Virus record (IMG/VR): IMGVR_UViG_3300049215_000529
Span: 62,001 to 126,000 of that record
Direction: 5' to 3' (one strand)
DNA: 64,000 nt
The first letter of the stretch is position 1. Every line of letters begins with the position of its first letter. Of the stretch, positions 7,300 to 47,457 are shown in pieces. Made by a program: the position numbers and the translations under genes. Below the pieces are notes generated by a model that was given only the letters and a program-made list of their open reading frames with translations, was not told the DNA's origin and made no database searches.

Positions 7300-7310
7300 A
7301 TTATTTCCAG

Positions 7311-26378: not shown

Positions 26379-26386
26379 GATACCAA

Positions 26387-32065: not shown

Positions 32066-32105
32066 TATATAGTGGTAGTCTGATTAAGAATGGAAGAGGT
32101 CAGTT

Positions 32106-34511
32106 TTGTTTGACGGAAAATACCTAGAGTGGAATCAGAAGCGTATTAAGGGAATCCTTGAATTTTATGGCGGACATAAGTTTTGGTACTTCAAAAAAGT
32201 ATTAGATTTAGGTTGTGGTCAAGGCGATATTATTGGAGCCTTGTATCGCTTGGGAGCAGATGTTTTAGCATTAGATGCTAGACAAGAACATTTACAAACA
32301 GCTGGAAAGAAATTCCCCGGATTAAAAACAATCAAAGCCGATTTGGATAGAGATTGGCCTTTTCCTAATAAGAAATTTGATGTTATTTTAGATTTGGGAT
32401 TGCTTTGTCACGTAAGAGACTATGAAGCTCATTTGAGGGCAGTATGTGCATCTACAACTCACTTGATATTGGAAACAGCTGTCTGTGACTCAGATGATCC
32501 AAATAAATGTATTATTTCTTCTGAAAATAAAAACATTTTTGATTTGTCAGTTAATGGTGTTAGTTCAAGACCAACAGCGGCAGCAATTGAAAGAGTGTTA
32601 ACCGAATGCAGTATGAACTTCAAACGTGTCGATAATGCTAAGTTCAATGCTGGTAATTTTACATATGATTGGCAAGTTCAAAATACTGGAGATACTAGTA
32701 TTTTAAGAAGAAGAATTTGGTTTGCAGTTAAAAATAGCAGCCCAATTCAATTTGCTAAGCCAGCGGTACAAAGTACTTATACTCCTCCTCCAATGGCGCC
32801 TCCTCCGATAATGTTTTCTCATCCTGCTTTTAGCGGCAATAATCATGCGCCAAGACTCGCTCAAATTCCAAATATTAATGACACTTTGCCACATAACAGA
32901 CAGATTAGTCAGGCGGGCGCAATTGTTGGAATTTGGAAGAGAGATGGTGCAAATTGGATTTGGGATAACGGCGCCGCCCCAAGTACATCAACAATTCCAC
33001 CACCCACACCAGCATCGAATGGAGTTCCAAATTGGGATAGTCCAATTAAGAAATTCGTAATTGTAATTCCAAGTTATAATAATAGTAAATGGTGTGTTCA
33101 AAATATTAATTCTGCATTAAGTCAAAACTATGATCAATTTAGAATTATATTTACTGACGACTGTTCCAGTGATGATACTTTTACTAAAGTAAGTGAGGCA
33201 GTTAATGCTTCACCTCGCGCCGACAAGGTTACACTAATTAAAAATGTGAACCGTATCGGCGCACTAGCAAATTTGTATAATATGATTCATAGCTGTGATG
33301 ACGATGAAATCATTCTTACACTAGATGGTGATGATTGGTTTCCAGATGACAATGTGTTGAATCGTCTAAAACAGATTTATTCTAGCCGCGACATTTGGAT
33401 GACTTACGGACAATATAAGAATAGTACGGATGGTAGCACTGGTGTGGCTGCACCTTATCCGCCTCACATCGTAAATACTGGAGCATTCAGACATACAACT
33501 TGGGGAGCTTCTCACTTAAGAACTTTCTATGCATGGCTATTCAAGAAGATCAACAAAGAAGACTTGCAGCAGAATGGCAATTTCTTCCAAATGACTTGGG
33601 ACTTTGCTATCATGTTCCCAATGCTAGAAATGTCTGGAGATCATTCTCAATTCTTGTCTGATATTCTATACGTTTACAATCTTGATAATCCAATTAACGA
33701 TCATAAAGTCAGTCGTCAATTGCAACAAAGTCTGGATTCGTACATTAGGAACATGCCGAAGTACGCCAAAACAGAGAGACCACCACCACCAAAGATTGCG
33801 GTTGGATTGTTGCTTATTGCAACCAATAAGTATCAAAAATTTATTCAAGGACTCATCTCTTCGGCAGATAAGTATTTCTTAAATGATAGATTCCAAGTTA
33901 CTTACTATGTATTTAGTGATACTAATAATCAAATTGAAACCAATAGAAATGTAGTACAAATACATATTGATCATAAGCCTTTCCCACATGCCAGCATGGA
34001 TAGATTCAAGCATTTTACAAATTACGCTAGCCAATTTAGCAAACAAGATTTCTTATACTACGTGGACGTAGACTGTTTGTTTGTTGACAACATATCTACC
34101 GAAATTCTTGGCAACTTGGTTGGAGTAAGACACTGCGGATACTTTAGCTCTCAAGGTCCATATGAGCATAATCCACAATCATCTCTTTACGTGCCAGTTG
34201 AATATCCTAAACGTTACAAATACTACTTCGGTGGTGGTTTCAGTGGTGGACAACGCGACAGTTATCTAAACTTATCCCGCTGGTGTAGTGAGATGATTGA
34301 CAAAGACTTAGCCAATGGAATAACTCCAGTTTGGCATGATGAAACGGCTATCAATAGGTATTTCTTGGACAATGAACCAGATATAGTATTGTCTCCAAGT
34401 TATCACTACCCTCAATCAAATATAGAGTATTATCGAAGACAGTGGGGTTCCAATAACTTTCATCCTAAAATCTTGCTCTTAGATAAAAATCACCAGGATA
34501 TACGCGGATGA
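32106..34511 (+). CDS. fusion: class I methyltransferase + Pro-rich linker + GT2 + GT6
   Basis: LDLGCGQG; IPSYN, TDDCS, LDGDDW; LLLIATNKY, YVDVD, YYFGGGFSGG, WHDETAINRYF. Confidence 0.85.
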   Translation: MFDGKYLEWNQKRIKGILEFYGGHKFWYFKKVLDLGCGQGDIIGALYRLGADVLALDARQEHLQTAGKKFPGLKTIKADLDRDWPFPNKKFDVILDLGLLCHVRDYEAHLRAVCASTTHLILETAVCDSDDPNKCIISSENKNIFDLSVNGVSSRPTAAAIERVLTECSMNFKRVDNAKFNAGNFTYDWQVQNTGDTSILRRRIWFAVKNSSPIQFAKPAVQSTYTPPPMAPPPIMFSHPAFSGNNHAPRLAQIPNINDTLPHNRQISQAGAIVGIWKRDGANWIWDNGAAPSTSTIPPPTPASNGVPNWDSPIKKFVIVIPSYNNSKWCVQNINSALSQNYDQFRIIFTDDCSSDDTFTKVSEAVNASPRADKVTLIKNVNRIGALANLYNMIHSCDDDEIILTLDGDDWFPDDNVLNRLKQIYSSRDIWMTYGQYKNSTDGSTGVAAPYPPHIVNTGAFRHTTWGASHLRTFYAWLFKKINKEDLQQNGNFFQMTWDFAIMFPMLEMSGDHSQFLSDILYVYNLDNPINDHKVSRQLQQSLDSYIRNMPKYAKTERPPPPKIAVGLLLIATNKYQKFIQGLISSADKYFLNDRFQVTYYVFSDTNNQIETNRNVVQIHIDHKPFPHASMDRFKHFTNYASQFSKQDFLYYVDVDCLFVDNISTEILGNLVGVRHCGYFSSQGPYEHNPQSSLYVPVEYPKRYKYYFGGGFSGGQRDSYLNLSRWCSEMIDKDLANGITPVWHDETAINRYFLDNEPDIVLSPSYHYPQSNIEYYRRQWGSNNFHPKILLLDKNHQDIRG

Positions 34512-35221
34512 TTTCGTTCAAAAACTTAGGAAATATGGGAAGGTTGGGAAACCAATTATTTCAAATAGCTACAACAATATCGTTGGCTGTTGAAAATAAT
34601 GAAGAATATATGTTCCCAGAATGGGAATATTCTTCCTATTTTAGCTTAACTCGTTGTTTTTCCAACAACATTCCTAATTTAGAGACATATAAAGAATCGG
34701 GTTTCGTGTACACCCCGATTCCTTATCGACCCAACTTAAATTTGGAAGGATTTTTTCAATCCGAAAAGTATTTTATTAGGTCTCAAGATATAATACAAAA
34801 TTTACTAACTCCTAAAGTAGGTGGACCTATTCAATGGGATCATACTGCAGTACATATTAGGCGTGGTGATTACTTAAATCTTAAACAGGAGTATGTTCAG
34901 TTGGGTATGGATTATTACTCAAAAGCTATGCAAATGACAGCAACTAAGAATTATATTATATTTTCTGATGATATGGCTTGGTGTAAAGCAAATTTTCAAG
35001 GTGATAACATTACATTTTCAGAAGGCAAGTCACCAGTAGAAGATTTGGCATTGATGTTGAGCTGTGAACACACAATTATAGCTAATAGCAGTTTTTCTTG
35101 GTGGGGAGCTTACTTAAATAAGAATCCCTCTAAAATTGTAATTGCACCTCAAAGATGGTTTGGACCGAATTTGCCACATGATACGAGAGATTTGTTGCCT
35201 TCCCAATGGACAAAATTATGA
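34508..35221 (+). CDS. glycosyltransferase family 11 (alpha-1,2-fucosyltransferase type)
   Basis: GRLGNQLFQ, VHIRRGDY, IANSSFSWWGAYL. Confidence 0.92.
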   Translation: MISFKNLGNMGRLGNQLFQIATTISLAVENNEEYMFPEWEYSSYFSLTRCFSNNIPNLETYKESGFVYTPIPYRPNLNLEGFFQSEKYFIRSQDIIQNLLTPKVGGPIQWDHTAVHIRRGDYLNLKQEYVQLGMDYYSKAMQMTATKNYIIFSDDMAWCKANFQGDNITFSEGKSPVEDLALMLSCEHTIIANSSFSWWGAYLNKNPSKIVIAPQRWFGPNLPHDTRDLLPSQWTKL

Positions 35222-35886
35222 CGATATACGAGAAAACCAGCAACTTCTATAATCAAAAAATAAATATTTCTAATATTAGAGAGTGGAGATTTGAATTCTT
35301 CGCAAAAACATGTCTTGGAAAGAGGGTTCTACATATAGGTTGCGCCGATTCGATGGTGTATGATCCCGAATCTAATCTTCATATTTATCTATCAAAAATA
35401 TATCAAAATAGCGACGAGTCACCCGCTCCCACTACCGTCTTGCACGGATTAGATATTGATGTTGAAACTACCAAAAAACTTTTAGAGGCATGTCCTGGAA
35501 CCTATTTTACATCATATGAGGATGTAAAAGAGGAATATGATATAGTTTTAGTTCCAGAAGTAATAGAACACGTTCCAAATGTTAATTCTTTTCTTAAAGA
35601 CATATTTTCAGTTAAATCTAAAGAATATTTAATTACTGTACCTAATATGAGTGTTGCTCAAATATTTTGTGATGATGAATATGCATTAGAGATGGTTCAT
35701 CCTGATCATAAATATTGGTTTTCACCTTATACACTATATAATACAGTAATACCTTTCCTTCCAGAAAATTTCAAAATGAAAATGTACTATCTAGAAAGAA
35801 AAGCTCAAATAGGAATACATTTCCAAAAGAAAACTGATTGTGAACTACACCTAGAGCAAAAAGAACAAGAGAAGGCGGCAGTATGA
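35206..35886 (+). CDS. class I SAM methyltransferase-like protein
   Basis: VLHIGC, HGLDID, EVIEHVPN, ITVPN. Confidence 0.7.
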   Translation: MDKIMTIYEKTSNFYNQKINISNIREWRFEFFAKTCLGKRVLHIGCADSMVYDPESNLHIYLSKIYQNSDESPAPTTVLHGLDIDVETTKKLLEACPGTYFTSYEDVKEEYDIVLVPEVIEHVPNVNSFLKDIFSVKSKEYLITVPNMSVAQIFCDDEYALEMVHPDHKYWFSPYTLYNTVIPFLPENFKMKMYYLERKAQIGIHFQKKTDCELHLEQKEQEKAAV

Positions 35887-36476
35887 CAACTTGGTGGAAT
35901 AAAAATGTAGTAAATAGAATGTCTGACTTTGAGGGTTGGATTGGAGATTTTGATCAACCAACAAAACTATTTTGTAGAAAATATGTTGCTGCCACAGGTT
36001 ACAAATCAATTATTGATTGTGGTTGTGGACTTGCGACAGAATATTTTGGATATAAAAATGATCAGTATGATGTGGATTATACTGGATTAGATAGCTGTAC
36101 ATACTTAGTTGACAAGAACAAAAATCTTGGTATCAAGATGGTAGAGGCTGAGCTTGAAGTAAACTTGCCACTGAAAGACAGCTCTTATGAATGTGTATAT
36201 TGTCGTGGAGTTATAGAACACCTTTCCTATTATGAAAAAACTATTAATGAATTCATCAGAGCTGCTAAAAAGGAAGTTTTAATTGGTTGGTTTATTAAAC
36301 CAGATAATGCAGATGATAAAATAGATTATTGGGTCGAGGAAGATTTGTATCATAATAAATATAATAAAGACAAGTTAGAAAAATTCATTATGAGCAACCC
36401 TAAAGTTGATAGAATTTTTTGGGATGAAATTGATGAAAAAGAAAACGTTCTGCACATCATGATAAAGGAAGTATGA
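35883..36476 (+). CDS. class I SAM methyltransferase
   Basis: IDCGCG, YTGLD, GVIEHL. Confidence 0.8.
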   Translation: MTTWWNKNVVNRMSDFEGWIGDFDQPTKLFCRKYVAATGYKSIIDCGCGLATEYFGYKNDQYDVDYTGLDSCTYLVDKNKNLGIKMVEAELEVNLPLKDSSYECVYCRGVIEHLSYYEKTINEFIRAAKKEVLIGWFIKPDNADDKIDYWVEEDLYHNKYNKDKLEKFIMSNPKVDRIFWDEIDEKENVLHIMIKEV

Positions 36477-37543
36477 GATTTTTTAATATAGATCAACACG
36501 TTTCAGTAATTGCCGACCTTGCTCATATCTTTAAAGATTTTGGGCATGAGACGGATGACTGGACGCTATCTGGGCACAACTGGGTTTTGAATAAACCAAA
36601 AAATACAATTAGGCTAGGCACCAGTGCTCTCACATGTTCTGGTGTTTGCTCAGAAGAAGTTTGTGATATTTTTTATGAAACTTATAAAGAAGAGTTCAAA
36701 AAATACGACGCTTTTATTGCTTGTTATCCAGCAGAATTTGCAATGCTTTATGAAAGATGGAACAAGCCCATTATTGTAATCAACTGCATTAGATATCAGC
36801 ATCCCAATACTTTTGATAACCCACATCTAGTAAAAAGATTAGAAGATTTTATGGCTAGAAAAACTGCTGATGGAACATTATATTGGGTATGTAGTAATAG
36901 AGGCGATCAGTGGTATACAGAATATCATACTGGTATTAAGGGAACATTTATTCCTCATTGGGGAACTTACACGAATCTAAAATATACAGGAACAAAAGAT
37001 AAATATATAATAGCTAATAGAACTGAAATATCAGTCTCTGGCGATTTAGCTATTCCTCTTTCTTCAATAAGAGATTCTAATTGGAGATATACTTGGGAAA
37101 ATTTATATAGTTATAAGGGAGTAATTCATATCCCATATGCAAATTCCACGTCATCAATGCATGAACAGTATACTGCAAACGTTCCACAATTTTTTCCATC
37201 TAAACAATATTGTAAAGAGATTTACCATCAAGGTAAAGCATTAGAAGAATTAACATTCTATAAAATAAACAAAAAACAAGAGCCAGATGATATTAATAAT
37301 CCCAACAGTCTTCGCAATCCTGCCATTTTAGAAAAGTGGTTAGACACTTCAGACTATTATGATCCAAAAGGTTTTTTGAAATATATTCAGTATTATGATT
37401 CGCCTGCCCATCTAGATCATTTATTAAGAACAGTCAACGCACGTGAAATTAGTAATGATATGTCATTTGCTAATATTGCAAAAAAAGAATACGCATATTC
37501 TGAATGGAAAAAAATACTTGACAGTATTAAAAATAAAACCTAA
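36473..37543 (+). CDS. putative glycosyltransferase-like protein
   Basis: island context; YKGVIHIPY..SSMHEQYTANVPQFFPS resembles GT-B C-terminal lobes. Confidence 0.5.
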   Translation: MRFFNIDQHVSVIADLAHIFKDFGHETDDWTLSGHNWVLNKPKNTIRLGTSALTCSGVCSEEVCDIFYETYKEEFKKYDAFIACYPAEFAMLYERWNKPIIVINCIRYQHPNTFDNPHLVKRLEDFMARKTADGTLYWVCSNRGDQWYTEYHTGIKGTFIPHWGTYTNLKYTGTKDKYIIANRTEISVSGDLAIPLSSIRDSNWRYTWENLYSYKGVIHIPYANSTSSMHEQYTANVPQFFPSKQYCKEIYHQGKALEELTFYKINKKQEPDDINNPNSLRNPAILEKWLDTSDYYDPKGFLKYIQYYDSPAHLDHLLRTVNAREISNDMSFANIAKKEYAYSEWKKILDSIKNKT

Positions 37544-37557
37544 TTAATGGAACTAAT

Positions 37558-38334
37558 ATGAAAATCTCTTTATTTTCTTTTGCCGTAAATGAAAAATTTC
37601 CAATTGATATTGCACACAGGCAATTCAAAAAATATATGAAGGAAGATTTTGAGTTTATTTTATTTAATGATGCCATGGATGTTCAATCAGAACAAAATAT
37701 TAATATGATTTGTTCATATAACAATATAAAATGTGTAAGGGTACCTCAACATATTCATAGAGTACAAAATCCTTCGGAGGGATATGCTGCAACATTGAAT
37801 TGGGCAGTCCATGAGTACGCCCCACAAAATGGCTGCGAAATAATTGTTCTCCTTCATACGGACGTATTTCCAATTTGTGATGTTGTAGTTTCTGACATTA
37901 TTGGAGAGAACATTGTAGCAAGTACTAGTGAATTTAGAATTATGGATGGCAAAGGAGTTAATTATTTTTATCCAGCTTTAACAATGGTTAATATGAAGCG
38001 TCTTGCAAACCCTCATGAATTAGATTTTGGATTAGCTCCTGGATTAGATTGTGGTGGAAAAACTAAAGATTTTATCAAGTCCCATGAATCAGCAGTAAAA
38101 TTTTTGAACAATCATCAAATTTCGTACATGATTGCTATACTGACAGGGCAACCAATTGCAGAATATTTTTCGAATGATTTAGCAATTTGCAGATCACACG
38201 GTTTAAGTGCAGGTTGGGTTGCCGATGGATTTTATCACTATATGGCGGGCTCACAATGGAACAATGCAGAAAATCCAACTTTCGCTGCTGGACACAAATT
38301 AAGAATGGATCTGTTCTTAAATTATTTCTATTGA
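37558..38334 (+). CDS. putative GT-A fold glycosyltransferase-like protein
   Basis: FILFND, LLHTDVFP, LDCGG, FYHYMAGSQW. Confidence 0.5.
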   Translation: MKISLFSFAVNEKFPIDIAHRQFKKYMKEDFEFILFNDAMDVQSEQNINMICSYNNIKCVRVPQHIHRVQNPSEGYAATLNWAVHEYAPQNGCEIIVLLHTDVFPICDVVVSDIIGENIVASTSEFRIMDGKGVNYFYPALTMVNMKRLANPHELDFGLAPGLDCGGKTKDFIKSHESAVKFLNNHQISYMIAILTGQPIAEYFSNDLAICRSHGLSAGWVADGFYHYMAGSQWNNAENPTFAAGHKLRMDLFLNYFY

Positions 38335-38337
38335 TAT

Positions 38338-38915
38338 TTATTTCTTCAATAAATGGGCTAATCCGGTAGTAGCATTAATAACATCAACAATTTCCCAGCC
38401 GTCAAAGCTTTTCTTTTCCAGATATTGCTTGACAAATGTTCCGCGCCCGCCATCAACGGTCCAATCATGCAATAGAACATTAGTTCCAGGCTTTACTTTT
38501 GCCTCTAAGATTTTAAATGATTGTAAGTTTTCAGAAATATCTGGATACAGTTCTGCAGGAAATGGCAGCTTTGCATCCCATGTTTCATCTCCCCATCTAA
38601 AAATATTACAACACTATTATCTTCAAAGTTGTATCTCTTAGTAGCATTGATAAAATCTTCGTTAAATAATGAAATGTATGGTTTGTATACTGACTGCTCA
38701 TAAAAATTATTTGCACACTCCCAGTATGGAGTATAAGTTTCATAGGTGTGAAGTTGCCCTGCTTTATTTTCAAATAGAGCTTTTACTAAAAATAAAGTGC
38801 TTCCGCCACCCTGCCAAGTTCCACTTTCTATAACTAAATTTGGCTTTAAAGAAACGACCAAATTAAATAGATAGTCTCTTTCAACATTGCTGAGTTGCCC
38901 GTCTGGTATTTGCAT
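38338..38915 (-). pseudogene. class I methyltransferase (Methyltransf_24-like) with 1-nt frameshift
   Basis: VIESGTWQGGGST...FLDG; one extra G in the G4 run (38591-38594) gives GDETW...VLLHDW...LLKK stop. Confidence 0.75.
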
Positions 38916-38926
38916 AAATATCTCCT

Positions 38927-39739: not shown

Positions 39740-39773
39740 ACTAATAAGGTTATATTGATATGGTGAGGCATAA

Positions 39774-40673: not shown

Positions 40674-40682
40674 GGAATTCTT

Positions 40683-41300
40683 ATGGTTAAGACTATTTGT
40701 ATATTTGGTGCAGGCGGTTTTGCTAGAGAAGTCTTTTGGCTCGCTAATCAGTGCGGCTGTGAGGTAGACGCTTTTATCGATGTGCAGGCAGGCAAAGACT
40801 ATTGTGGAGTAAAAGTAGAGGACGAGAATTATTTTGATCCCAACAAACATTTAGCTGTAGTTGCTGTTGGTAATCCGCGTATCCGCGAAATTATTGTAAA
40901 AAAAATTATTGACCACCATGGAGATAGTGTCTTCAAAACACTTATTCATCCCCGAGCTATTTTAATGGATCCCAATATTAGTATTGGCTCTGGTTCAGTT
41001 ATTTGTGCCAACTGTCTATTAACATGTGATATACAATTGGGGGCATTCTCACAGCTCAATTTAGCCACAACTATTGGTCACGATACTGTTACTGGAGATT
41101 TTTTTACTACCGCCCCAGGTGTTCACGTTAGTGGTCATGTGAAGACTGGTAACAGAGTGTATCTAGGCACCAACTCTTCAACCGTTGAAGATATTGCGAT
41201 CTGTAGCGATGTAACTATTGGTGCGGGCGCATGTGTGGTAAAAGATATTGCAGAAAGTGGAACTTATGTAGGTATACCTGCTAAGAAATTAAAGACATGA
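40683..41300 (+). CDS. NeuD/PglD-family sugar acetyltransferase
   Basis: IFGAGGFARE, VAVGNP, TLIHP, IGHD, hexapeptide repeats. Confidence 0.9.
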   Translation: MVKTICIFGAGGFAREVFWLANQCGCEVDAFIDVQAGKDYCGVKVEDENYFDPNKHLAVVAVGNPRIREIIVKKIIDHHGDSVFKTLIHPRAILMDPNISIGSGSVICANCLLTCDIQLGAFSQLNLATTIGHDTVTGDFFTTAPGVHVSGHVKTGNRVYLGTNSSTVEDIAICSDVTIGAGACVVKDIAESGTYVGIPAKKLKT

Positions 41301-42409
41301 TTCCAATTTATAAGCCATACTTGCCAAAATCTTCTTTAGCATATGCACATGAAGCCCTGGATTCTACCTGGATTTCTTCGCAAGGAAAATACATACAACT
41401 AGCACAAGAAGCGTTACAGGAGCTGCTTAATGCGCCTTATGTTATTTTATTAAATAATGGCACTAGTGCCTGCCATCTAGTGGCTAAGTGTTTAGCAACC
41501 AAACAAAATAAGAATGAAATTATAGTTCCAAACAACGTCTATGTGGCAGCTTGGAATGCCTTTTTATTTGATAGAGATTACAAAATCTTCACTGTGGATG
41601 CCGACCTCAACACTTGGAATTACAATCTAGATGAACTAGATAAATCCATTATCGCTCATCCAAATGCTGCAGTCCTAATAGTACATAATATTGGAAATAT
41701 TATTAATGTGCCTAAATTAAAAAGAAAATATCCTAATACATTATTTGTTGAAGATAATTGTGAAGGATTTTTAGGAACTTATGAAAATGTCTTTACCGGC
41801 ACTGCCTCTTATGCTTCTAGCATTTCTTTTTTTGGAAATAAAAACATAACTAGTGGTGAAGGTGGCGCCTTCATTACTAACGATGAAGATGTATGTCTTT
41901 TTGCAAAGTGTGTGCAAGGTCAAGGACAATCTGCTAAACGATTCATTCACGATGAGTTGGGTTATAACTACCGCATGACCAATATTCAAGCGGCTATTTT
42001 GTATGGACAGCTTGAAATTTTACCAACTATCTTAGACCTGAAACACAAGATATTTGATAGATATCGCACCGAATTTCAAGACCGCTCAGACATTTTTATT
42101 CAAAAGAATGCAGATAATACAAAAAATGCTAATTGGCATTTTGGCGTTAGAGTGCCGGGGCAAACAAGCTATGAAGTGGCTGAGTCATTTTTCAAACAAC
42201 GCAGCATTGAAATTAGACCAATGTTTTACCCTATGCATGCACACAAATATATTAGTGACATGGATTGCATACAACAAGAAGATTCGACTAATGCCGTTCT
42301 TCTTAACAAAGAGTGTTTTCTTCTTCCAAGTTATCCAGAATTAAAATCGGATGAACAGGACTATATATTAAAATCTGTTAACGATTATCTAAATTCTGGT
42401 AAAAGATAA
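41297..42409 (+). CDS. DegT/DnrJ/EryC1/StrS aminotransferase (perosamine-synthase-like)
   Basis: EDNCE, SFFGNKNITSGEGG, GYNYRMTNIQAA. Confidence 0.9.
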   Translation: MIPIYKPYLPKSSLAYAHEALDSTWISSQGKYIQLAQEALQELLNAPYVILLNNGTSACHLVAKCLATKQNKNEIIVPNNVYVAAWNAFLFDRDYKIFTVDADLNTWNYNLDELDKSIIAHPNAAVLIVHNIGNIINVPKLKRKYPNTLFVEDNCEGFLGTYENVFTGTASYASSISFFGNKNITSGEGGAFITNDEDVCLFAKCVQGQGQSAKRFIHDELGYNYRMTNIQAAILYGQLEILPTILDLKHKIFDRYRTEFQDRSDIFIQKNADNTKNANWHFGVRVPGQTSYEVAESFFKQRSIEIRPMFYPMHAHKYISDMDCIQQEDSTNAVLLNKECFLLPSYPELKSDEQDYILKSVNDYLNSGKR

Positions 42410-43023
42410 GTGTCAGCCCTCTTTTTCAACATCTCAACTATTTCATCAGGATATTGATTTGCTGCAGATATGCTGTTTATTTTGTTCATATCAAAAGCGG
42501 CAGGATCTATCCACCAATCTTCAAATGGAAGATTGGGACCCATACCACAACCAAGTGGCGCACATACGTCAGGAAATACTCGTACATAGCCATAGCTGTC
42601 CAAAATAGCGCGCTCCGCAATTCTAGCAGCGTCACCAATTCTATAAGCATCATGCTCTATAGTAATAGTAGTGAATCTGTAATCAGCTAGCGGTAATTGT
42701 TTAAGTGCATCTACACTGCTATCATCACAATCTAATGAAAGATAATCTATTCTAGACGGATATCCTAAAGATTGAAATACTTCTTTATAATTAACTTTAG
42801 TTGCATCCTCATTTACAAAGTGACATGTTCTTTCCTTATATTGTTCTGCATATTGTGGACCTATTTCTACACAAATACCTTTCCAATTATATAGGTGTTC
42901 TAGAAGCCAAGAATTATTTAGATTCTTAGCATCATTGCTGCCAATATCCAAATAGGTTCCATCTCGCTTAAAGCTTAACATATTCCAAACAAAACTCTCT
43001 TGCCATGCCTGTGATCCGCCCAT
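42385..43023 (-). CDS. FkbM-like methyltransferase
   Basis: SQAWQE, YLDIGS, NNSWLLE, IDYLSLD, TIEHD, EDWW. Confidence 0.75.
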   Translation of the reverse strand: MGGSQAWQESFVWNMLSFKRDGTYLDIGSNDAKNLNNSWLLEHLYNWKGICVEIGPQYAEQYKERTCHFVNEDATKVNYKEVFQSLGYPSRIDYLSLDCDDSSVDALKQLPLADYRFTTITIEHDAYRIGDAARIAERAILDSYGYVRVFPDVCAPLGCGMGPNLPFEDWWIDPAAFDMNKINSISAANQYPDEIVEMLKKRADTYLLPEFR

Positions 43024-43033
43024 GTGTTTTTCC

Positions 43034-44251
43034 TTATATTCCAATAATTTCAAACTGAGGACATGGTACAATGAATTTACCACCTGCCCTCAAAAAATCT
43101 ATTTCGCGCGCCACAAATTCATTAATAAAATGCCACGGTAATACCAGTAAATAGTCTGGTTTATTTTTTCGCATATCTTCTTCCGAATAAATCGGAATAT
43201 TGGTTCCGACAGTATGCAAGCCAAATTTGTATGGACTACGTTCTGCCACACCATCAATTACAGTATGATCTAATCCAAAATATTGGAGCAGTGTATTGCC
43301 CTTAGTCGAGGCACCATACGCCCATATAGTTTTACCTTTGGCTTTTTCAGATTTGACAAAATCAACCGTTTGTTCGCGGAGCGCATTAATTCTATCATAA
43401 AAATGCTTCCAAGTTAAAATAGAGTCTAGGTGCAAAGTATCTTCAAACGCAAGAAGTGAATTAACTCTAAATTCACAAACATCACGATATGGCTGTGTCG
43501 CAAAATGTTTAGGATTGGAGCCTTGCTTCATAATGTAAACACGAAATGAACCGCCGTTTATATCATTCAATTGACAGTCCATTATTTTAAAACCATGCTT
43601 TTCTAGTAAAGATTTTAAATTAAATAACGAGTAATAGTAAATATGTTCGTGGCAAATGTTGTCGAAAGCGAGCTGCTGCAACATAAGAGGAGTATAGCTT
43701 AGTTGCATTACCCAAAGACCATCGCAATCCAATACGTCATAAATATCTTCAATAAAAGCATCCGGATGTTCTAAATCATAGAACATAGCAATAGAGGTGA
43801 TTACCTTGGCTTTTTTATCACCAAATTTTGATTGTTTAAAAACGTCAGCACTAAAATAGTCTTGAATAATTAGATCGGCACGTTTTTCTGACTCTGCCTT
43901 GTAGGTATCATCGGCTGGATCAATTCCCACTTTGACAACATTTGGCAGAATAAAACTAAGAAGCGTACCATCATTACAGGCAATATCTATCCAAAGATCA
44001 TTATTTTGCAAACTTATTACGCCAGTAATGGACTCGACAATGCCTTTAAGTTCATTGGTCATGGTAGCATTGATGCCAGAGCGATACCAATATCTGCCAT
44101 ACATTGCCTCTTTAGGAGCCTGTTTTTCTAGGCGAACAGCCCCGTTATCATCGAGCAAAAGTTTCATTTCTACCTTATCAGCACGAGGAGAATCCTCTGC
44201 TTTTAAGAAGTCAGAAACATATAGCTCGCCCAAAGAAAACAATTCTTTCAT
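43034..44251 (-). CDS. NDP-sugar C-methyltransferase
   Basis: YWYRSGIN, DIACNDG, CHEHIYYYS, YGASTKGNTLLQY, LPWHF. Confidence 0.88.
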   Translation of the reverse strand: MKELFSLGELYVSDFLKAEDSPRADKVEMKLLLDDNGAVRLEKQAPKEAMYGRYWYRSGINATMTNELKGIVESITGVISLQNNDLWIDIACNDGTLLSFILPNVVKVGIDPADDTYKAESEKRADLIIQDYFSADVFKQSKFGDKKAKVITSIAMFYDLEHPDAFIEDIYDVLDCDGLWVMQLSYTPLMLQQLAFDNICHEHIYYYSLFNLKSLLEKHGFKIMDCQLNDINGGSFRVYIMKQGSNPKHFATQPYRDVCEFRVNSLLAFEDTLHLDSILTWKHFYDRINALREQTVDFVKSEKAKGKTIWAYGASTKGNTLLQYFGLDHTVIDGVAERSPYKFGLHTVGTNIPIYSEEDMRKNKPDYLLVLPWHFINEFVAREIDFLRAGGKFIVPCPQFEIIGI

Positions 44252-44511
44252 TATTTTTCCTTGCCATACATCTTATTTTTTCCCTGACCATATAGCTTTT
44301 GAACGGTTCCATTCTTTACCATATCATTTAGACATTCATCAATCTCCTGTATTAAATCATTTCTTTGTTGATTTGCTACATTAGTAAGGCGAGTTGCATC
44401 AGCAATTTGTTTATCAGTAGCATTTGGATCACGTTTAATATCTTCTGCCATCCAAATTCTAATATTTACAATGGTCAATTGGTCAATTAGGTTGCCTATG
44501 GTAACTTTCAT
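44251..44511 (-). CDS. small helical hypothetical protein
   Basis: TIGNLIDQLTIVNIRIW..ED...NQQRNDLIQEID. Confidence 0.7.
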   Translation of the reverse strand: MKVTIGNLIDQLTIVNIRIWMAEDIKRDPNATDKQIADATRLTNVANQQRNDLIQEIDECLNDMVKNGTVQKLYGQGKNKMYGKEK

Positions 44512-44579
44512 GTTATGTCCTTTACATCGAAAATGTGGATATATACATAGATAGCAAGCTATTGAAATTGAGGCATTAA

Positions 44580-45497
44580 ATGAGTATTTGTTTAGTTACT
44601 GGTGGAGCGGGATTCATTGGTAGTCATATTGTTGACTCTCTCATTGATAAGGGTCATCAGGTAGTAATTATAGACAATCTTGTTACTGGAAATATCAAGA
44701 ATCTTAATCCTAGAGCTACCTTTTACCAGCAAAACGTCATCAATCCTCTAAATTATATTTTCGATAAATTCAAATTTGATTATGTTTTTCATTTAGCTGC
44801 ACAAATTAATCTAAGACATTCCATCAAAGAACCGGCTGAAGACGCTCTAGCCAATGTAGTTGGCAGCCTCAACATCCTTGAAAATTGCGCGCGCGCTAAT
44901 GTAAAACGAGTCATCTTTTCTTCCACGGGCGGAGCCATCTATTCGCCCCATGAAATTTTACCATTTACCGAACAATCCCTGGCATATCCGGAGTCGCCTT
45001 ATGGCTTAGCAAAACAAACAGTAGAGAAGTATTTGGAAATTTTTCAAAAACTATATGGTCTACAATATACGGTATTAAGATACAGCAATGTTTTTGGTCC
45101 CCGTCAAGATAGCAAGGGTGAAGCTGGCGTCATCGCTATTTTCATCCAAAGAGCGCTTGCGGACGAAGATTTGACCATCTTTGGAGATGGAAAGCAGACC
45201 AGAGACTTTGTTTATGTGCAAGATGTAGTTCAGGCGAATATGTTAGCATTAGAGCAAGAACTGAATGGTACTTTTAATGTCAGCTCTAATTTACAATACA
45301 GTGTGAATGATGTTGCTCAAAAGATAGTTCAATATATTCCGACATCCTCTAAAATTGTTCATACAGCGCCTATTGTTGGAGAATTACTGTACACTCAATT
45401 AAGTGCCGAAAAATTAAAAGCCAGAGGGTGGAATAATTTCTGGTCTCTAGATAATGGAATAGTTGAAACGATCAAGTATTTTGATGATTTGATATAA
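44580..45497 (+). CDS. NAD-dependent epimerase/dehydratase (GalE-like SDR)
   Basis: VTGGAGFIGSH, HLAAQ, SSTGGAIY, YGLAK, LRYSNVFGPRQ. Confidence 0.9.
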   Translation: MSICLVTGGAGFIGSHIVDSLIDKGHQVVIIDNLVTGNIKNLNPRATFYQQNVINPLNYIFDKFKFDYVFHLAAQINLRHSIKEPAEDALANVVGSLNILENCARANVKRVIFSSTGGAIYSPHEILPFTEQSLAYPESPYGLAKQTVEKYLEIFQKLYGLQYTVLRYSNVFGPRQDSKGEAGVIAIFIQRALADEDLTIFGDGKQTRDFVYVQDVVQANMLALEQELNGTFNVSSNLQYSVNDVAQKIVQYIPTSSKIVHTAPIVGELLYTQLSAEKLKARGWNNFWSLDNGIVETIKYFDDLI

Positions 45498-45517
45498 TCA
45501 AGATAAAGGAATATTAA

Positions 45518-46519
45518 ATGGCACCTACGGCTTGCATTACTGGAATTACTGGACAAACTGGATCATATTTATGTGAATTACTCTTAGAAAAGGGATATCA
45601 GATATACGGTCTTAAAAGACGCAGCTCTTCATTTAATACAGAAAGATTAAATCATGTATATGAAGATCCACATGCTGATAGTAAACTAAAATTGGTTTAT
45701 GGTGATTTGTCTGACTTCTCTTCTTTATCTAGTTTAGTTGCTGAGGTGAAGCCTGATTTATTTTTTAATCTTGCAGCTCAAAGTCACGTGCGTGTTAGCT
45801 TTGATATTCCAGAGTATACGATGGATGTTACCGGAACTGGCGTAATAAGAGCGCTTGAAGCTATTCATAAGCACAGCCCTCAAACCAAATTTTTAACGGC
45901 ATCAAGCTCTGAAATGTTTGGTTCCACTCCTCCACCCCAAAGCGAGACCACACCATTTCATCCTCGCTCTCCATACGGAGTCGCCAAAGTGGCAGGCTTT
46001 TGGGCAACCACCAATTACCGCGAATCTTATGGAATGCATGCCTGTAATGCTATTTCTTTCAATCATGAATCTGGCAGGCGCGGAGAGACCTTCGTTACCC
46101 GTAAAATTACTATGGCAGCGACCAGAATCAAGCTTGGTTTACAAGACAAGCTCTATTTAGGAAATTTGGAAGCTAAGCGAGACTGGTCTCACGCCGCCGA
46201 TGTGGCTGATGCAATGTTTAAAATTATCACAGCGCCAGAGCCAGATGATTATGTGGTAGCCAGTGGCGAGATGCATTCAGTGCGCGAGTTTGCTGAAATG
46301 GTCTTCAACAAGCTTGATTTGGATTATTCTAAATATGTAGAATTTGACGCAAGATATTTGAGACCAGCCGAAGTTGATGCTTTGTGCGGGGATCCTACCA
46401 AATTAAAAACTAAATTAGGATGGCAGCCAAAGTATACCTTTGAACAGCTCGTCGATGAGATGATTGCTTCTGATATGGAACTGGCTCGTCAAGAAAAGAT
46501 CTTAAAGGACAACAAATGA
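45518..46519 (+). CDS. gmd: GDP-mannose 4,6-dehydratase
   Basis: [48 protein letters not shown]. Confidence 0.95.
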
Positions 46520-47457
46520 AAATCTTGGTCACGGGTGGCACTGGTTTTCTTGGAAAGCACGTAGTACCAAAATTAAAAGAGCAGCATGAGGTTTGGGCAC
46601 CTTCAAGCAAAGAAGTAAATGTACTAGACTTCTACGCACTTAATCATGCTGTAGTGCAGTCTGGTCCAGATGTAATTTTACATATGGCTGCCAAATGTGC
46701 GGGTATCCTTGGTAACCGCATCAATCCAGCTGACTTTTTAAGAGATAATACTCAAATGGGTCTCAATGTTTATGAAGTTGCCCGTATTTTAAAAATAGAG
46801 ACAGTTTATACTTTGGGTTCAGTATGTGCTTATCCAAAATTTTGTCCAGCCCCATTCAAAGAGGAAAACATTTGGAATGGTGCAGCAGAGGAAACAAACT
46901 TCCCATATGGTCAAGCCAAAAGAACGCTAATGATGTTAGGGCAAACTTATCGCCAACAATACGGCATGAAAGGCGCTCACCTTATTCCTGTAAATATGTA
47001 TGGAGAGTATGACACATTCGATCCAACTTACAGTCATGTTATTCCGGCACTTATTCGTAAATTTGAAGAGGCGATCCGCAATGATAGCGGAGTTGTTAAA
47101 TGCTGGGGAACTGGTGAAGCTACCAGAGAATTCTTGTACGCTGGCGACTGCTCTGAAGCCATTTTAAAAGCCGTAAACGACGGACTCGATACCGATTTAC
47201 CAATTAATCTTGGAGTTGGCAAGGATATTTCTATTAAAGATCTGGCTCATTTGGTCGGGCATCTGACTGGATTTCAAGGAGAAATCGTCTTCACGAATGA
47301 GGTGTCAGATGGGCAGCCTAAGAGAATGTTAGATGTTTCCCGCGCTAAAGAAATGCTTGGCTGGGCAGCAAAGACAGACTTTAAAGACGGACTACTTCGT
47401 GTCATTCAATGGTATCGAGATAATAGAGACCGGGTTATTGCGCAGGACGTTTCTTAA
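46516..47457 (+). CDS. fcl: GDP-L-fucose synthase
   Basis: [53 protein letters not shown]. Confidence 0.9.

What the first reader, a model, noticed from the sequence alone, without database searches (positions are those of the whole stretch)
33792..47457. GT6 + GT11 + GDP-fucose synthesis: a histo-blood-group-like pathway
Seen: GT6 domain directly followed by GT11 (ATGA overlap), with gmd, fcl and a GalE-like epimerase in the same island. Established: GT11 makes Fuc-alpha1,2-Gal (H) and GT6 adds alpha1,3-Gal/GalNAc (B/A), as WbnK/WbnI do in E. coli O86; most bacterial GT6 have NXN whereas this one has DVD (34065-34073) like vertebrate enzymes. Inference: an A/B-like epitope built with self-supplied donors.
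Basis: partly seen in the sequence, partly recalled or inferred. Interest (0 to 1): 0.7.

Follow-up and report, generated by a model that had tools for sequence, protein, structure and literature searches.

The report
Megaphage blood-group-A-like glycan gene island
A roughly 430-kb bacteriophage from a moss metagenome carries a 16-kb sugar-building island whose conserved core looks built to make a blood-group-A-like sugar cap. That core is a GT2, a GT11 fucosyltransferase and a metal-type GT6, with two of the three fused into one 801-residue enzyme. It is an interesting variant of phage and bacterial systems that are already known, not a new kind of system.

Summary
A GT6 domain with DVD at 34065-34073 is followed by GT11 through an ATGA overlap, and a GalE-like epimerase, gmd and fcl lie 10 kb downstream.

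- The window lies in a 204-kb IMG/VR phage record, estimated about 47% complete. Relatives reach 428 kb with terminal repeats.
- The GT6 is the C-terminal domain of one 801-aa protein: SAM-methyltransferase, then GT2, then GT6.
- The island runs from 31250 to 47457. It holds about 7 glycosyltransferase domains, about 6 methyltransferases and a second amino-sugar route. It has no membrane, initiation or export genes.

DXD is not special. 147 of the 150 nearest GT6 clusters and all 57 aligned phage and MAG copies have it, and this was published for cyanophage P-SSM2 and Parachlamydia.

Residue-level tests fit an A-synthase. The positions that mark fucosylated-acceptor use are His, Gly and Leu. 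The donor triplet is Gly-Gly-Gly, the GalNAc type.

In relatives, this GT2 plus GT11 is the invariant pair and GT6 is optional. I read that as "H-type" versus "A-type" phages. The same three genes cluster in Chlamydiota and Dependentiae MAGs. A fold model with controls supports GT11 docking on the GT6 domain.

The target is unresolved: host LPS or an O-unit, or phage virion proteins.

Verdict: a new variant of a known kind, of moderate interest.

The parts
31250..32065 (+). Stand-alone GT2 glycosyltransferase upstream of the fusion gene. The listed ORF starts at GTG, so the true start may be a little downstream.
   Evidence: PF00535 69.9 bits. Homologues of 45-69% identity lie upstream of the module in phage relatives of types A, B and D.
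32106..34511 (+). One 801-aa protein with three domains. SAM-methyltransferase is residues 1-215 (32106-32750). A Pro-rich variable linker follows. The GT2 domain is residues 306-560 (33021-33785). The GT6 domain is residues 563-801 (33792-34508).
   Evidence: Pfam finds all three domains in one ORF. The TTG start aligns with Met in relatives, and catalytic motifs are invariant in 27 sequences. More than 100 full-length homologue clusters exist. An identical protein comes from a second assembly, L006.
34065..34073 (+). DVD (D654-V655-D656), the DXD metal and UDP-binding motif of the GT6 domain.
   Evidence: Read directly from the sequence. Aligned with the NAN motif of BoGT6a. Invariant in alignment A1.
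34131..34139 (+). H676-C677-G678. These are the acceptor-discriminating positions, equivalent to BoGT6a His122 and Gly124.
   Evidence: alpha3GalT, which uses non-fucosylated acceptors, has Gln and Trp here (PMC3516806).
34230..34238 (+). G709-G710-G711, the donor-specificity triplet. It corresponds to L266-G-G268 in GTA and A155-G-G in BoGT6a.
   Evidence: Small residues mark the GalNAc-type donor pocket. That rule is my knowledge of GTA versus GTB, plus BoGT6a and PaGT6 being GalNAc transferases (PMC3516806).
34341..34343 (+). E746 in the WHDE motif, the catalytic Glu. It is equivalent to Glu192 of BoGT6a.
   Evidence: It is Glu in 149 of the 150 nearest clusters.
34508..35221 (+). GT11 glycosyltransferase of 237 aa, a predicted alpha1,2-fucosyltransferase. 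It overlaps the stop of the fusion gene by ATGA.
   Evidence: PF01531 110 bits. Full-length match to phrog_2644. The HIRRGD motif is present. It is adjacent to the module in relatives. It is predicted to bind the GT6 domain.
35206..35886 (+). Putative methyltransferase of 226 aa. The evidence is weak.
   Evidence: PF13489 19.3 bits, below the cut-off. L002 has an 80% identical homologue.
35883..36476 (+). SAM-dependent methyltransferase of 197 aa.
   Evidence: PF08241 38.2 bits.
36473..37543 (+). Phage-specific putative GT-B glycosyltransferase of 356 aa. This is a lead only.
   Evidence: Its nearest Atlas clusters are named glycosyltransferase. Their models match GT1/GT4 folds at TM 0.6-0.66. 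No Pfam or PHROG hit.
37558..38334 (+). Unknown protein of 258 aa.
   Evidence: No Pfam or PHROG hit. L002 has a 66% identical homologue.
38505..38915 (-). Small ORF with weak Methyltransf_24 similarity. It may be truncated.
   Evidence: PF13578 22.5 bits, below the cut-off. Translation.
38927..39739 (-). Putative GT-A (GT8-like) hexosyltransferase of 270 aa, counted from the internal Met.
   Evidence: Translation shows an RDADS motif. Atlas neighbours include clusters named 'Hexosyltransferase' and GT8-like. L002 has a 77% identical homologue. This is a lead only.
39774..40673 (+). GT9-like (heptosyltransferase-fold) GT-B glycosyltransferase of 299 aa.
   Evidence: Atlas structure matches to GT9 clusters at TM 0.76-0.78. 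AlphaFold2 model with pLDDT 70.8; the top Foldseek PDB hits are GT9 3TOV (E 9.5e-10), WaaF 1PSW and WaaC, with TM only 0.35-0.47. Conserved at 45-67% identity in L002-4, L015, L016, L018 and L019.
40683..41300 (+). Sugar N-acetyltransferase of the NeuD/PglB/VioB family.
   Evidence: TIGR03570 168.7 bits against a 160.8 cut-off. PglD_N plus hexapeptide repeats.
41297..42409 (+). DegT/LegC/PseC-type sugar aminotransferase.
   Evidence: PF01041 219 bits. Best NCBIfam match is the LegC family at 204 bits, below its cut-off.
42385..43083 (-). FkbM-like methyltransferase of 232 aa. The evidence is weak.
   Evidence: PF05050 14.6 bits, below the cut-off. The L002 homologue carries a faint Methyltransf_21 hit. 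44-60% identical in L002 and L003.
43034..44251 (-). Sugar C-methyltransferase (Methyltransf_14 C-terminal domain).
   Evidence: PF08484 154 bits. 73-86% identical in L002-4. Present in only 4 of 16 IMG/VR relatives.
44251..44511 (-). DUF4254 protein of 86 aa, paired with the C-methyltransferase.
   Evidence: PF14063 48 bits. The same pairing is seen in L002 and L003.
44580..45497 (+). GalE-like UDP-hexose 4-epimerase. It would supply UDP-Gal and/or UDP-GalNAc.
   Evidence: PDB 4ZRM (T. maritima GalE) 288 bits over the full length. TIGR01179 174.8 bits, below its cut-off.
45518..46519 (+). GDP-mannose 4,6-dehydratase (gmd).
   Evidence: TIGR01472 447.8 bits against a 415 cut-off.
46516..47457 (+). 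GDP-L-fucose synthase (fcl, also called GMER).
   Evidence: 1BWS 190 bits over residues 2-306, with all five catalytic residues kept. NF047922 250 bits, below its 500 cut-off.

Best explanation
**What it is.** This is the glycan-synthesis island (31250-47457) of a phage of about 0.43 Mb.

**The core module.** Three enzymes are kept together in phages and bacteria: a particular GT2, a GT11 and a DXD-type GT6. Here the GT2 and GT6 are fused behind a SAM-methyltransferase into one 801-aa soluble protein. GT11 is translationally coupled to it and probably docks on its GT6 domain.

**Inferred order of steps.**
1. The GT2 domain adds a beta-linked Gal-like residue.
2. GT11 adds alpha1,2-fucose from GDP-fucose made by the phage gmd and fcl.
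3. The GT6 domain, which is metal-dependent, adds alpha1,3-GalNAc (possibly Gal) from a UDP-sugar supplied through the GalE-like epimerase. This gives a blood-group-A-like cap.
4. The N-terminal methyltransferase and the other methyltransferases O-methylate the glycan.

Four further GTs, an amino-sugar route and a C-methyl-sugar route build the rest of the oligosaccharide.

**Target.** The phage has no initiating, flipping or polymerising enzymes. The glycan is therefore most likely assembled at the cytoplasmic face on a host acceptor (LPS core or an undecaprenyl-linked unit) and exported by host machinery. That would change the surface of the infected cell, for example to exclude competing phages.

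**Shown versus inferred.** Shown: domain identities, conserved motifs, gene linkage and the absence of export genes. Inferred: sugar identities, order of steps and target.
For: - **Domains and motifs:**
- **Phage identity:** IMG/VR record of 204,190 bp, CheckV 47%. PHROG hits. A relative, G010, is 428,320 bp with direct terminal repeats and rated 100% complete. The fusion protein occurs on contigs of 420-480 kb.
- **GT6 acceptor and donor residues:** H676/G678/L791 and GGG 709-711 are invariant in the aligned megaphage family. The rule comes from PMC3516806, which also shows that the DXD enzyme PaGT6 transfers GalNAc to H antigen, needs metal and rejects LacNAc.
- **Linkage of the module:** GT11 is present in 15 of 16 related records. 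It abuts the GT6-bearing ORF in most and lies 0.8-2.8 kb away in three.
- **Independent fusions:** GT2-GT11 in L021, GT2-GT6 in L029 and GT6-GT2 in L104.
- **Same genes in bacteria:** the same three genes, often with gmd and fcl, cluster in Chlamydiota, Dependentiae and Verrucomicrobiota MAGs.
- **gmd and fcl in relatives:** gmd in 13 of 16 related records, fcl-like in 9 of 16.
- **Complex model:** ipSAE 0.62 against a best control of 0.16. That mark was reached by 51 of 78 solved complexes and 2 of 108 mismatched pairs. The interface is on the GT6 domain.
- **No export machinery:** no transmembrane protein in the island and no large multi-pass ORF in the 204 kb. No PF02397, PF00953, PF01943 or PF04932 in the own record, in the complete relative or in three other large relatives, with positive controls.
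- **Literature:** glycan clusters of jumbo cyanophages are read as surface modification against superinfection (PMC7824862, PMC13282480).
Against: - No biochemistry exists for any protein of this family.
- The GT2 domain has no specific equivalog, so its sugar is a guess.
- The BoGT6a Thr134 equivalent is Pro here. It is Pro or Thr across the family.
- The all-Gly donor triplet is roomier than in any characterised GT6, so the donor could be a larger N-acyl hexosamine.
- Fcl is missing from 7 of 16 related records, including a complete 200-kb phage that has GT6, GT11 and a gmd-like gene.
- gmd product is also the likely substrate of the aminotransferase and the C-methyltransferase, so GT11 might transfer another GDP-6-deoxyhexose.
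- Nothing identifies the host or shows that the glycan reaches the cell surface.
- The complex model is only the predictor's own confidence.
Confidence: 0.45

Rival explanations
1. The chemistry is the same but the target differs. The soluble enzymes glycosylate the phage's own virion proteins (capsid decoration, tail or fibres) in the cytoplasm. This would give a methylated, A-like glycan coat on the particle, as giant viruses and some mycobacteriophages do.
For: - All island proteins are soluble, and there are no initiation or export genes in the own record, one complete relative and three other large relatives.
- The 299-aa GT-B protein is GT9-like, and the protein O-heptosyltransferase TibC appears among its structural matches at rank 33.
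- Fusions of GT and methyltransferase domains in one viral protein recall chlorovirus A064R (my knowledge).
- Capsid glycosylation by phage GTs is suggested for mycobacteriophages (PMC11256854).
Against: - The island is not next to structural genes. It is flanked by tRNA, tmRNA, Thg1 and RNA-repair genes.
- The same three-gene module sits in non-viral Chlamydiota, Dependentiae and Verrucomicrobiota genomes. In one of them it lies beside an SDR epimerase and a PfkB-family kinase that may belong to heptose/LPS-core synthesis.
- No acceptor protein has been identified.
Confidence: 0.25
2. The module is not blood-group-like in product. GT11 transfers another GDP-6-deoxyhexose, such as a C-methylated, rhamnose-, talose- or colitose-type sugar. 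GT6 then adds a hexosamine to that different branch, so the epitope is unrelated to H or A.
For: - In the window, L002, L003 and L004, a C-methyltransferase with its DUF4254 partner lies in the same island as GT11.
- Fcl is absent in 7 of 16 related records while gmd is present in 13 of 16.
- G005 has gmd flanked by other SDRs and no fcl.
Against: - In this window fcl is intact with all catalytic residues and overlaps gmd.
- The GT6 positions that recognise the fucosylated acceptor are of the A/B type and invariant in the aligned family.
- The C-methyltransferase is found in only 4 of 16 IMG/VR relatives, so it is not tied to GT11.
- PaGT6, of the sister DXD clade, strictly needs the fucosylated acceptor (PMC3516806).
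Confidence: 0.2
3. The island is bacterial, not viral. It would be a mis-binned or chimeric piece of a Chlamydiota- or Dependentiae-like genome, or a provirus flank.
For: - Homologous modules occur in many bacterial MAGs of similar GC content, 0.32-0.46.
- One relative, G014, is flagged as a provirus by IMG/VR.
Against: - The island is embedded in 204 kb with phage hallmarks on both sides.
- The same synteny (Thg1, GT2, fusion gene, GT11) occurs in 420-470 kb contigs from independent samples and in a 428-kb genome with terminal repeats.
- Megaphage GT6 domains form their own clade with 100% SH-aLRT support, next to cyanophage GT6 and apart from the cellular clade.
Confidence: 0.03

Closest known systems
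DXD clade of GT6: cyanophage P-SSM2 GT6 (PSSM2_268) and Parachlamydia acanthamoebae PaGT6
   Same: - Minimal catalytic domain with a DXD motif and no C-terminal membrane-binding domain.
- About 35% identity to P-SSM2 GT6.
- It groups with cyanophage GT6 in the tree.
- PaGT6 makes A antigen from UDP-GalNAc and H antigen and needs Mg/Mn (PMC3516806).
- GT11 and other GTs are nearby in P-SSM2, and GT11 is directly adjacent in Synechococcus phages B23, B3 and S-8S55.
   Different: - Here the domain is the C-terminus of a three-domain 801-aa protein.
- The donor triplet is GGG, not AGG.
- The carrier is a phage of about 430 kb from a moss metagenome, not a T4-like cyanophage.
E. coli O86 O-antigen enzymes WbnJ (GT2 beta1,3-GalT), WbnK (GT11 alpha1,2-FucT) and WbnI (GT6 alpha1,3-GalT)
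   Same: GDP-fucose genes are in the cluster.
   Different: - WbnI is an NXN, metal-independent, Gal-transferring enzyme (B-like).
- The O86 cluster relies on an initiating transferase and includes wzx and wzy. None of these is found in the phage.
- The O86 enzymes are separate proteins.
- I did not test sequence similarity between the phage GT2 domain and WbnJ.
LPS and capsule modification gene clusters of jumbo cyanophages (Iyer et al. 2021, PMC7824862)
   Same: - NDP-sugar synthesis genes together with several GT families.
- Sporadic presence and polymorphism between related phages.
- Proposed role in changing the host surface against superinfection.
   Different: - A different phage lineage with a much larger genome.
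- Heavy methyltransferase content.
- The fused MTase-GT2-GT6 enzyme and the presence/absence pattern of GT6 are not described there.
Bacteroides ovatus BoGT6a (PDB 4AYJ, 4AYL)
   Same: - Best solved-structure match, 133 bits.
- The same acceptor-binding His, Gly, Tyr, Trp and Glu residues, and a small donor triplet.
- It is an A-antigen synthase.
   Different: BoGT6a has NXN and is metal-independent. It is a stand-alone protein with a C-terminal membrane-binding segment (PMC3516806).
Chlorovirus PBCV-1 A064R (multi-domain glycosyltransferase-methyltransferase)
   Same: A single soluble virus-encoded polypeptide combines two glycosyltransferase domains with a sugar methyltransferase domain (my knowledge, not tested here).
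   Different: Different GT families, domain order and sugars (rhamnose). It comes from a eukaryotic virus and its target is the capsid protein N-glycan.

Membership tests
CAZy GT6 / Pfam PF03414 | Sequence match to the family model above the curated cut-off | tested here: met
   PF03414 133.3 bits against a cut-off of 25. PDB GT6 chains match at E 1e-37 to 1e-22. phrog_3317 matches over its full length. The NCBIfam subfamily NF041524 scores 168.7 against a cut-off of 250, so that bacterial subfamily model is not reached.
CAZy GT6 / Pfam PF03414 | DXD motif (metal-dependent clade) or NXN motif (metal-independent clade) after beta-strand 4 | tested here: met
   DVD at residues 654-656, aligned with the NAN motif of BoGT6a. 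Invariant in 27 relatives. Actual metal dependence was not assayed.
CAZy GT6 / Pfam PF03414 | Catalytic Glu in WHDE and the C-terminal Lys/Arg lid | tested here: met
   E746, K794 and R800 are invariant. Their roles are described in PMC3961637.
Histo-blood-group A/B synthase subtype of GT6 (fucosylated acceptor) | His, Gly and an aliphatic residue at the BoGT6a 122, 124 and 228 positions (alpha3GalT has Gln, Trp, Trp) | tested here: met
   H676, G678 and L791. The rule is from PMC3516806. The Thr134 equivalent is Pro.
Histo-blood-group A/B synthase subtype of GT6 (fucosylated acceptor) | Transfer of alpha1,3-GalNAc or Gal to Fuc-alpha1,2-Gal | not testable with these tools
   Needs an enzyme assay. 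The donor triplet GGG suggests GalNAc.
CAZy GT11 / Pfam PF01531 alpha1,2-fucosyltransferase | Family model above cut-off, HxRRxD motif, full-length catalytic domain | tested here: met
   PF01531 110.2 bits against a cut-off of 23.9. HIRRGD is in the translation. It covers phrog_2644 positions 1-265 of 265. Use of GDP-fucose as donor was not assayed.
De novo GDP-L-fucose pathway (Gmd + Fcl) | Gmd equivalog | tested here: met
   TIGR01472 447.8 bits against a cut-off of 415.
De novo GDP-L-fucose pathway (Gmd + Fcl) | Fcl equivalog with epimerase and reductase catalytic residues | tested here: inconclusive
   NF047922 scores 250 bits, below the curated 500. Against that, it is the best family match, the alignment to E. 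coli GMER is end to end, and S107, C109, Y136, K140 and H179 are all conserved.
Wzx/Wzy-dependent O-antigen cluster (E. coli O86 type) | Initiating phosphoglycosyltransferase, Wzx flippase and Wzy polymerase encoded with the GTs | tested here: not met
   No PF02397, PF00953, PF01943 or PF04932 in the own 204-kb record, in the complete 428-kb relative or in three other large relatives, with controls positive. No multi-pass membrane ORF over 170 aa in the own record. The host could supply these functions.
Jumbo-phage surface-glycan (LPS/capsule) modification clusters | Phage-borne NDP-sugar genes plus several GT families, polymorphic among related phages | tested here: met
   The island content is shown. 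Variable gene content and four module architectures among relatives are shown. The description of the kind is in PMC7824862.

The most novel reading that the evidence does not exclude
Related megaphages carry an ABO-like polymorphism. All keep the GT2 plus GT11 'H' module, and only some add the GT6 'A' cap. GT6 was gained or lost at least twice, once by fusing GT11 in its place. The same cassette is shared with obligate intracellular bacteria of protists (Chlamydiota, Dependentiae). If the glycan is displayed on infected cells or virions, it may be a diversifying recognition tag read by lectins of protist grazers or hosts, or by competing phages. A phage would then re-type the 'blood group' of its bacterium and change who can eat or infect it. 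The fused enzyme with docked GT11 would act as a soluble four-activity assembly line.
Probability: 0.15. Interest if true: 0.8.

Novelty: new variant of a known kind. Interest (0 to 1): 0.5.

Why it matters
**Evolution of GT6.** GT6 enzymes define the human ABO and alpha-Gal antigens. Their origin by transfer from DXD-type prokaryotic or phage enzymes has been argued since 2010 (PMC3516806).
- This locus shows that the DXD form is the common environmental form.
- It travels as a three-enzyme module (GT2, GT11, GT6) through huge phages and protist-associated bacteria.
- GT6 is an optional add-on to that module.

**Practical use.** The soluble fusion enzyme, with its coupled fucosyltransferase and nucleotide-sugar genes, is a candidate one-pot catalyst for A/H-type or methylated glycans.

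**Phage biology.** It adds a well-delimited, testable case to the question of what the large glycan islands of jumbo phages are for.

Tried and rejected
- **Near-identical GenBank phages.** A megablast of the island against GenBank phages found nothing. Only protein-level GT6 hits to cyanophages and two phages of about 640 kb appeared.
- **GT11 structure.** GT11 has no relative with a solved structure by sequence.
- **GT2 and methyltransferase specificity.** The GT2 domain and the N-terminal methyltransferase gave only generic PDB and NCBIfam matches, so no sugar specificity could be assigned.
- **Unknown ORFs.** PHROG and Pfam gave nothing for the ORFs of 226, 356, 258, 270, 299 and 232 aa. 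Atlas and fold searches gave leads only.
- **Expression.** No RNA run was listed for the locus.
- **Host.** The host could not be identified. The only environmental clue is that four moss-metagenome runs hold the DNA.
- **Metagenome relatives.** The whole contigs behind L002-L004 are not held, so gmd and fcl co-occurrence there rests only on matching contig lengths.
- **Epimerase specificity.** I tried to decide whether the GalE-like enzyme handles UDP-GlcNAc. The literature I could read gives the three-group scheme but not the group of its closest structure, so this is left open.
- **Small Methyltransf_24-like ORF.** I looked for a frameshifted remainder and found none.
- **Ideas rejected.** (a) That DVD signals a vertebrate-like oddity. 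(b) That the 237-aa GT11 is truncated; it is full length for phage GT11. (c) That the C-methyltransferase and GT9-like gene belong to the invariant core.

Full report
**1.
The ORF 32106-34511 (+) encodes 801 residues. The codons GAC GTA GAC at 34065-34073 give D654-V655-D656. In a phmmer alignment to Bacteroides ovatus BoGT6a (4AYJ, E 1e-37) they sit exactly on its Asn-Ala-Asn motif. The stop TGA at 34509-34511 overlaps the ATG at 34508 of a 237-aa GT11 ORF (PF01531, 110 bits).

Ten kilobases downstream lie three nucleotide-sugar genes:
- A GalE-like epimerase (44580-45497). Its best solved relative is T. maritima UDP-glucose 4-epimerase 4ZRM, 288 bits.
- gmd (45518-46519). TIGR01472 scores 447.8 against a cut-off of 415.
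- fcl (46516-47457). It aligns end to end with E. coli GDP-fucose synthetase, and Ser107, Cys109, Tyr136, Lys140 and His179 are conserved. It scores 250 bits against a curated 500-bit cut-off.

**2.
The window is bases 62001-126000 of a 204,190-bp IMG/VR virus record that CheckV rates 47% complete.
- Neighbouring genes hit phage families: an FtsK-like ATPase, a T4-type RNA ligase, a polynucleotide kinase and a nucleotidyltransferase.
- A tmRNA and tRNAs lie just upstream of the island.
- Full-length homologues of the 801-aa protein (46-80% identical, more than 100 clusters at 90% identity) sit on contigs of 420-480 kb.
- One relative, IMGVR_UViG_3300014208_000023, is 428,320 bp with direct terminal repeats and is rated complete.
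- The DNA is held in four moss-metagenome runs.
- An identical copy of the protein occurs on an independent 130-kb assembly (L006), so the fusion is not an assembly artefact.

**3. Anatomy of the island (31250-47457).**
The 801-aa protein has three domains:
- A SAM-methyltransferase (residues 8-125 by Pfam).
- A proline-rich linker of variable length.
- A GT2 domain (residues 317-484 by Pfam; conserved to about residue 560).
- The GT6 domain.

In an alignment of 27 relatives the TTG start aligns with Met. The catalytic signatures of all three domains are conserved or invariant: the LDLGCG SAM motif, the GT2 DD and DGDD motifs, and the GT6 motifs described in section 4.

Around this gene lie:
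- An upstream GT2 (31250-32065).
- GT11.
- Two methyltransferase ORFs (35206-36476).
- A phage-specific GT-B-like protein (36473-37543; Atlas lead).
- An unknown protein (37558-38334).
- A GT8-like GT-A protein on the minus strand (38927-39739).
- A GT9-like GT-B protein (39774-40673). Atlas gives TM 0.76-0.78 to GT9 clusters. The AlphaFold2 model has pLDDT 70.8. The top Foldseek PDB hits are GT9 3TOV, WaaF and WaaC at E 1e-9 to 1e-6, but with TM only 0.35-0.47.
- A NeuD/PglD-family N-acetyltransferase and a DegT-type aminotransferase.
- An FkbM-like methyltransferase, a sugar C-methyltransferase and a DUF4254 protein on the minus strand.
- The epimerase, gmd and fcl.

This adds up to about seven GT catalytic domains and about six methyltransferases. 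None of these proteins has a convincing transmembrane segment, and the whole 204 kb has no large multi-pass membrane ORF.

**4. Residue-level tests of the GT6 domain.**
PMC3516806 gives a rule for acceptor type. Enzymes that use fucosylated acceptors (GTA, GTB, BoGT6a) have His, Gly and an aliphatic residue at BoGT6a positions 122, 124 and 228. alpha3GalT, which uses unfucosylated acceptors, has Gln, Trp and Trp.
- **Acceptor positions.** This protein has H676, G678 and L791. H676 and G678 are invariant in the alignment of 27 relatives. L791 is Leu in all aligned megaphage copies where that position is covered.
- **Other acceptor contacts.** Tyr153, Trp189 and Glu192 equivalents are kept. The Thr134 equivalent is Pro (Pro or Thr in the family).
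- **Donor triplet.** It is Leu-Gly-Gly in human GTA, Ala-Gly-Gly in BoGT6a (both GalNAc transferases), and bulkier in the Gal transferases (my knowledge). Here it is Gly-Gly-Gly, invariant in the alignment of 27 relatives.
- **C-terminal lid.** Lys and Arg, whose roles are described in PMC3961637, are present as K794 and R800.

These features predict a metal-dependent alpha1,3-GalNAc transferase acting on a fucosylated galactose. That is the activity measured for the DXD enzyme of Parachlamydia (PMC3516806).

**5. DXD is ordinary for this clade.**
- An exhaustive search finds 2262 GT6 clusters at 50% identity.
- Of the 150 nearest, 147 have DxD and one has NxN.
- All 57 megaphage, cyanophage-like and MAG copies that I aligned have DxD.
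- The existence of a DXD clade in cyanophage P-SSM2, marine metagenomes and Parachlamydia, and its metal dependence, were published in 2012-2014 (PMC3516806, PMC3961637).
- GT6 fused to other domains is also common: 62 of the 150 nearest clusters.

**6. The comparative result: a three-enzyme module with an optional GT6.**
In 16 IMG/VR records related through the GT2 or GT6 domain, GT11 is present in 15. The exception is a locus that ends at the contig edge. I found four architectures:
- **A.** MTase-GT2-GT6 followed by GT11. This is the window, L002-4, L011-13 and L019.
- **B.** An unknown N-terminus of about 400 aa, then GT2-GT6 (870-928 aa), followed by GT11.
- **C.** One 875-aa protein in which GT11 takes the place of GT6 behind the GT2 domain (L021).
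- **D.** A stand-alone GT2 of 252-268 aa followed by GT11: directly in four records, 2 kb downstream in a fifth. No GT6 is found anywhere in records of up to 336 kb.

On a GT2+GT11 tree, type D is one side of a branch (92/92 support) and type C is nested among type A. GT6 presence therefore changed at least twice. My reading is that this GT2 plus GT11 is the invariant 'H-like' unit and GT6 is an optional 'A-like' cap.

For the nucleotide-sugar genes, gmd is present in 13 of 16 records and is missing only from fragments of 40-55 kb. An fcl-like gene (186 bits or more) is present in 9 of 16. The C-methyltransferase is present in only 4 of 16, so it is part of the variable shell.

**7. The same module in bacteria.**
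A scan of one genome per species found this GT2 together with GT6, often with GT11, gmd and fcl within 6 kb. The carriers are MAGs of Chlamydiota (Parachlamydiaceae, Rhabdochlamydiaceae, Simkaniaceae), Dependentiae/TM6/Babeliales, Verrucomicrobiota and low-GC MAGs labelled 'Pseudomonadota'.
- The genes are usually separate.
- The order GT2-GT11-GT6-gmd-fcl occurs in a Parachlamydiaceae MAG (L068).
- Independent fusions occur: GT2-GT6 in L029 and GT6-GT2 in L104.
- High-GC Binataceae, delta-proteobacterial and Acidobacteriaceae MAGs have the GT2 alone.

In a GT6 tree, the 14 megaphage domains form one clade (100% SH-aLRT). They group with cyanophage GT6 (81%) and stand apart from the cellular clade (89%). 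GenBank cyanophages also pair the genes: GT11 lies directly upstream of GT6 in Synechococcus phages B23, B3 and S-8S55, and three genes away in P-SSM2. Two phages of about 640 kb carry a GT2-GT6 match without the methyltransferase.

**8. Physical coupling.**
A fold model of residues 300-801 with GT11 scored ipSAE 0.62 (three runs: 0.67, 0.62, 0.61) against a best control of 0.16. In the tool's calibration that mark was reached by 51 of 78 solved complexes and 2 of 108 mismatched pairs. The confident contacts lie on the GT6 domain (residues 661-666, 675, 680-681, 760-766, 777-786), close to the DXD and acceptor residues. This supports binding but does not show it. It agrees with the translational coupling and with the GT2-GT11 fusion in L021.

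**9. How it most likely works.**
- **Shown:** the identities, motifs, linkage and lack of export genes.
- **Inferred:** the GT2 domain lays down a beta-linked Gal-like residue. GT11 adds alpha1,2-Fuc from phage-made GDP-fucose. GT6 adds alpha1,3-GalNAc from a UDP-sugar equilibrated by the GalE-like enzyme. The methyltransferases O-methylate the product. The other GTs, the amino-sugar route and the C-methyl-sugar route build the rest of the glycan.

No WbaP- or WecA-type initiating transferase, Wzx, Wzy/WaaL or GmhA is encoded in the own record, the complete 428-kb relative or three other large relatives, while the controls were positive. The glycan must therefore be built on a host acceptor and exported by the host, or be put on proteins in the cytoplasm.

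I favour host envelope remodelling, for these reasons:
- The GT9-like fold suggests LPS core chemistry.
- The module occurs in cellular genomes. In a Verrucomicrobia MAG it lies next to an SDR epimerase and a PfkB-family kinase that may belong to heptose/LPS-core synthesis.
- Published readings of jumbo-phage clusters point the same way (PMC7824862, PMC13282480).

Virion glycosylation remains a serious rival.

**10. Novelty.**
- **Already known:** GT6 with DXD in phages, GT6 with GT11 in cyanophage islands, and jumbo-phage glycan clusters.
- **Not found in the searched library:** the MTase-GT2-GT6 fusion enzyme and its megaphage family; the invariant GT2+GT11 unit with optional GT6; the wide sharing of the cassette with Chlamydiota and Dependentiae; and the predicted GT11-GT6 complex.

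This makes it a new variant of a known kind.

**11. Limits.**
- There is no biochemistry, no host, no expression data (no RNA run was listed) and no rooted tree with vertebrate sequences.
- The GT annotations of three ORFs are leads from predicted structures.
- Absences in incomplete viral records are weak evidence.

Noticed in passing
window 27921-28277 (-): A phage-encoded tmRNA. Rfam RF00023 scores 96 bits against a gathering score of 47. ARAGORN did not call it.
   Followed up: no
window 26304-26379, 28776-28847, 29519-29593, 29657-29728 (all -): A tRNA cluster just upstream of the island. It holds tRNA-Arg(CCT) and tRNA-Thr(GGT), plus two weaker tRNA hits found only by Rfam (44 and 41 bits) and not by ARAGORN.
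   Followed up: no
window 29787-30572 (-): A Thg1-like tRNA-His guanylyltransferase (Pfam 64.8 bits). It keeps this position next to the island in relatives L002 and L003, and those loci also carry IF3 and PTH2 genes upstream.
   Followed up: partly
window 53623-54852, 57075-58064, 62270-63424 (all -): A T4-style RNA-repair set: an Rnl1-like RNA ligase, a polynucleotide kinase and a nucleotidyltransferase.
   Followed up: no
L003 20816-22003; L004 14913-16379: The glycan islands of relatives hold a RuBisCO-large-subunit-like gene and a PRK plus class II aldolase fusion, next to NTP-transferases. These are unexplained. They might belong to an unusual sugar-nucleotide route.
   Followed up: no
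L021 8909-11536; L029 about 6001-7470; L104 about 947-2400: Independent gene fusions among the module's enzymes: X-GT2-GT11 (875 aa, phage), GT2-GT6 (539 aa, bacterial MAG) and GT6-GT2 (526 aa, MAG).
   Followed up: partly
L014-L018, L020 (N-terminal ~380-440 aa of the 870-928-aa proteins): In type-B relatives the methyltransferase is replaced by a domain of about 400 aa with no Pfam match.
   Followed up: no
window 38505-38915 (-): A short ORF with weak Methyltransf_24 similarity whose C-terminus looks off-family, so it may be a truncated gene. A search for a frameshifted remainder found nothing.
   Followed up: partly
window 35000-38000: A GC trough of 0.31-0.34 against 0.395 for the whole record. 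It covers the methyltransferase and GT-B genes that vary between relatives.
   Followed up: no
L068 9631-10179: A Parachlamydiaceae MAG carries a second, partial GT6 ORF (profile positions 158-312) right after its full GT6 gene.
   Followed up: no
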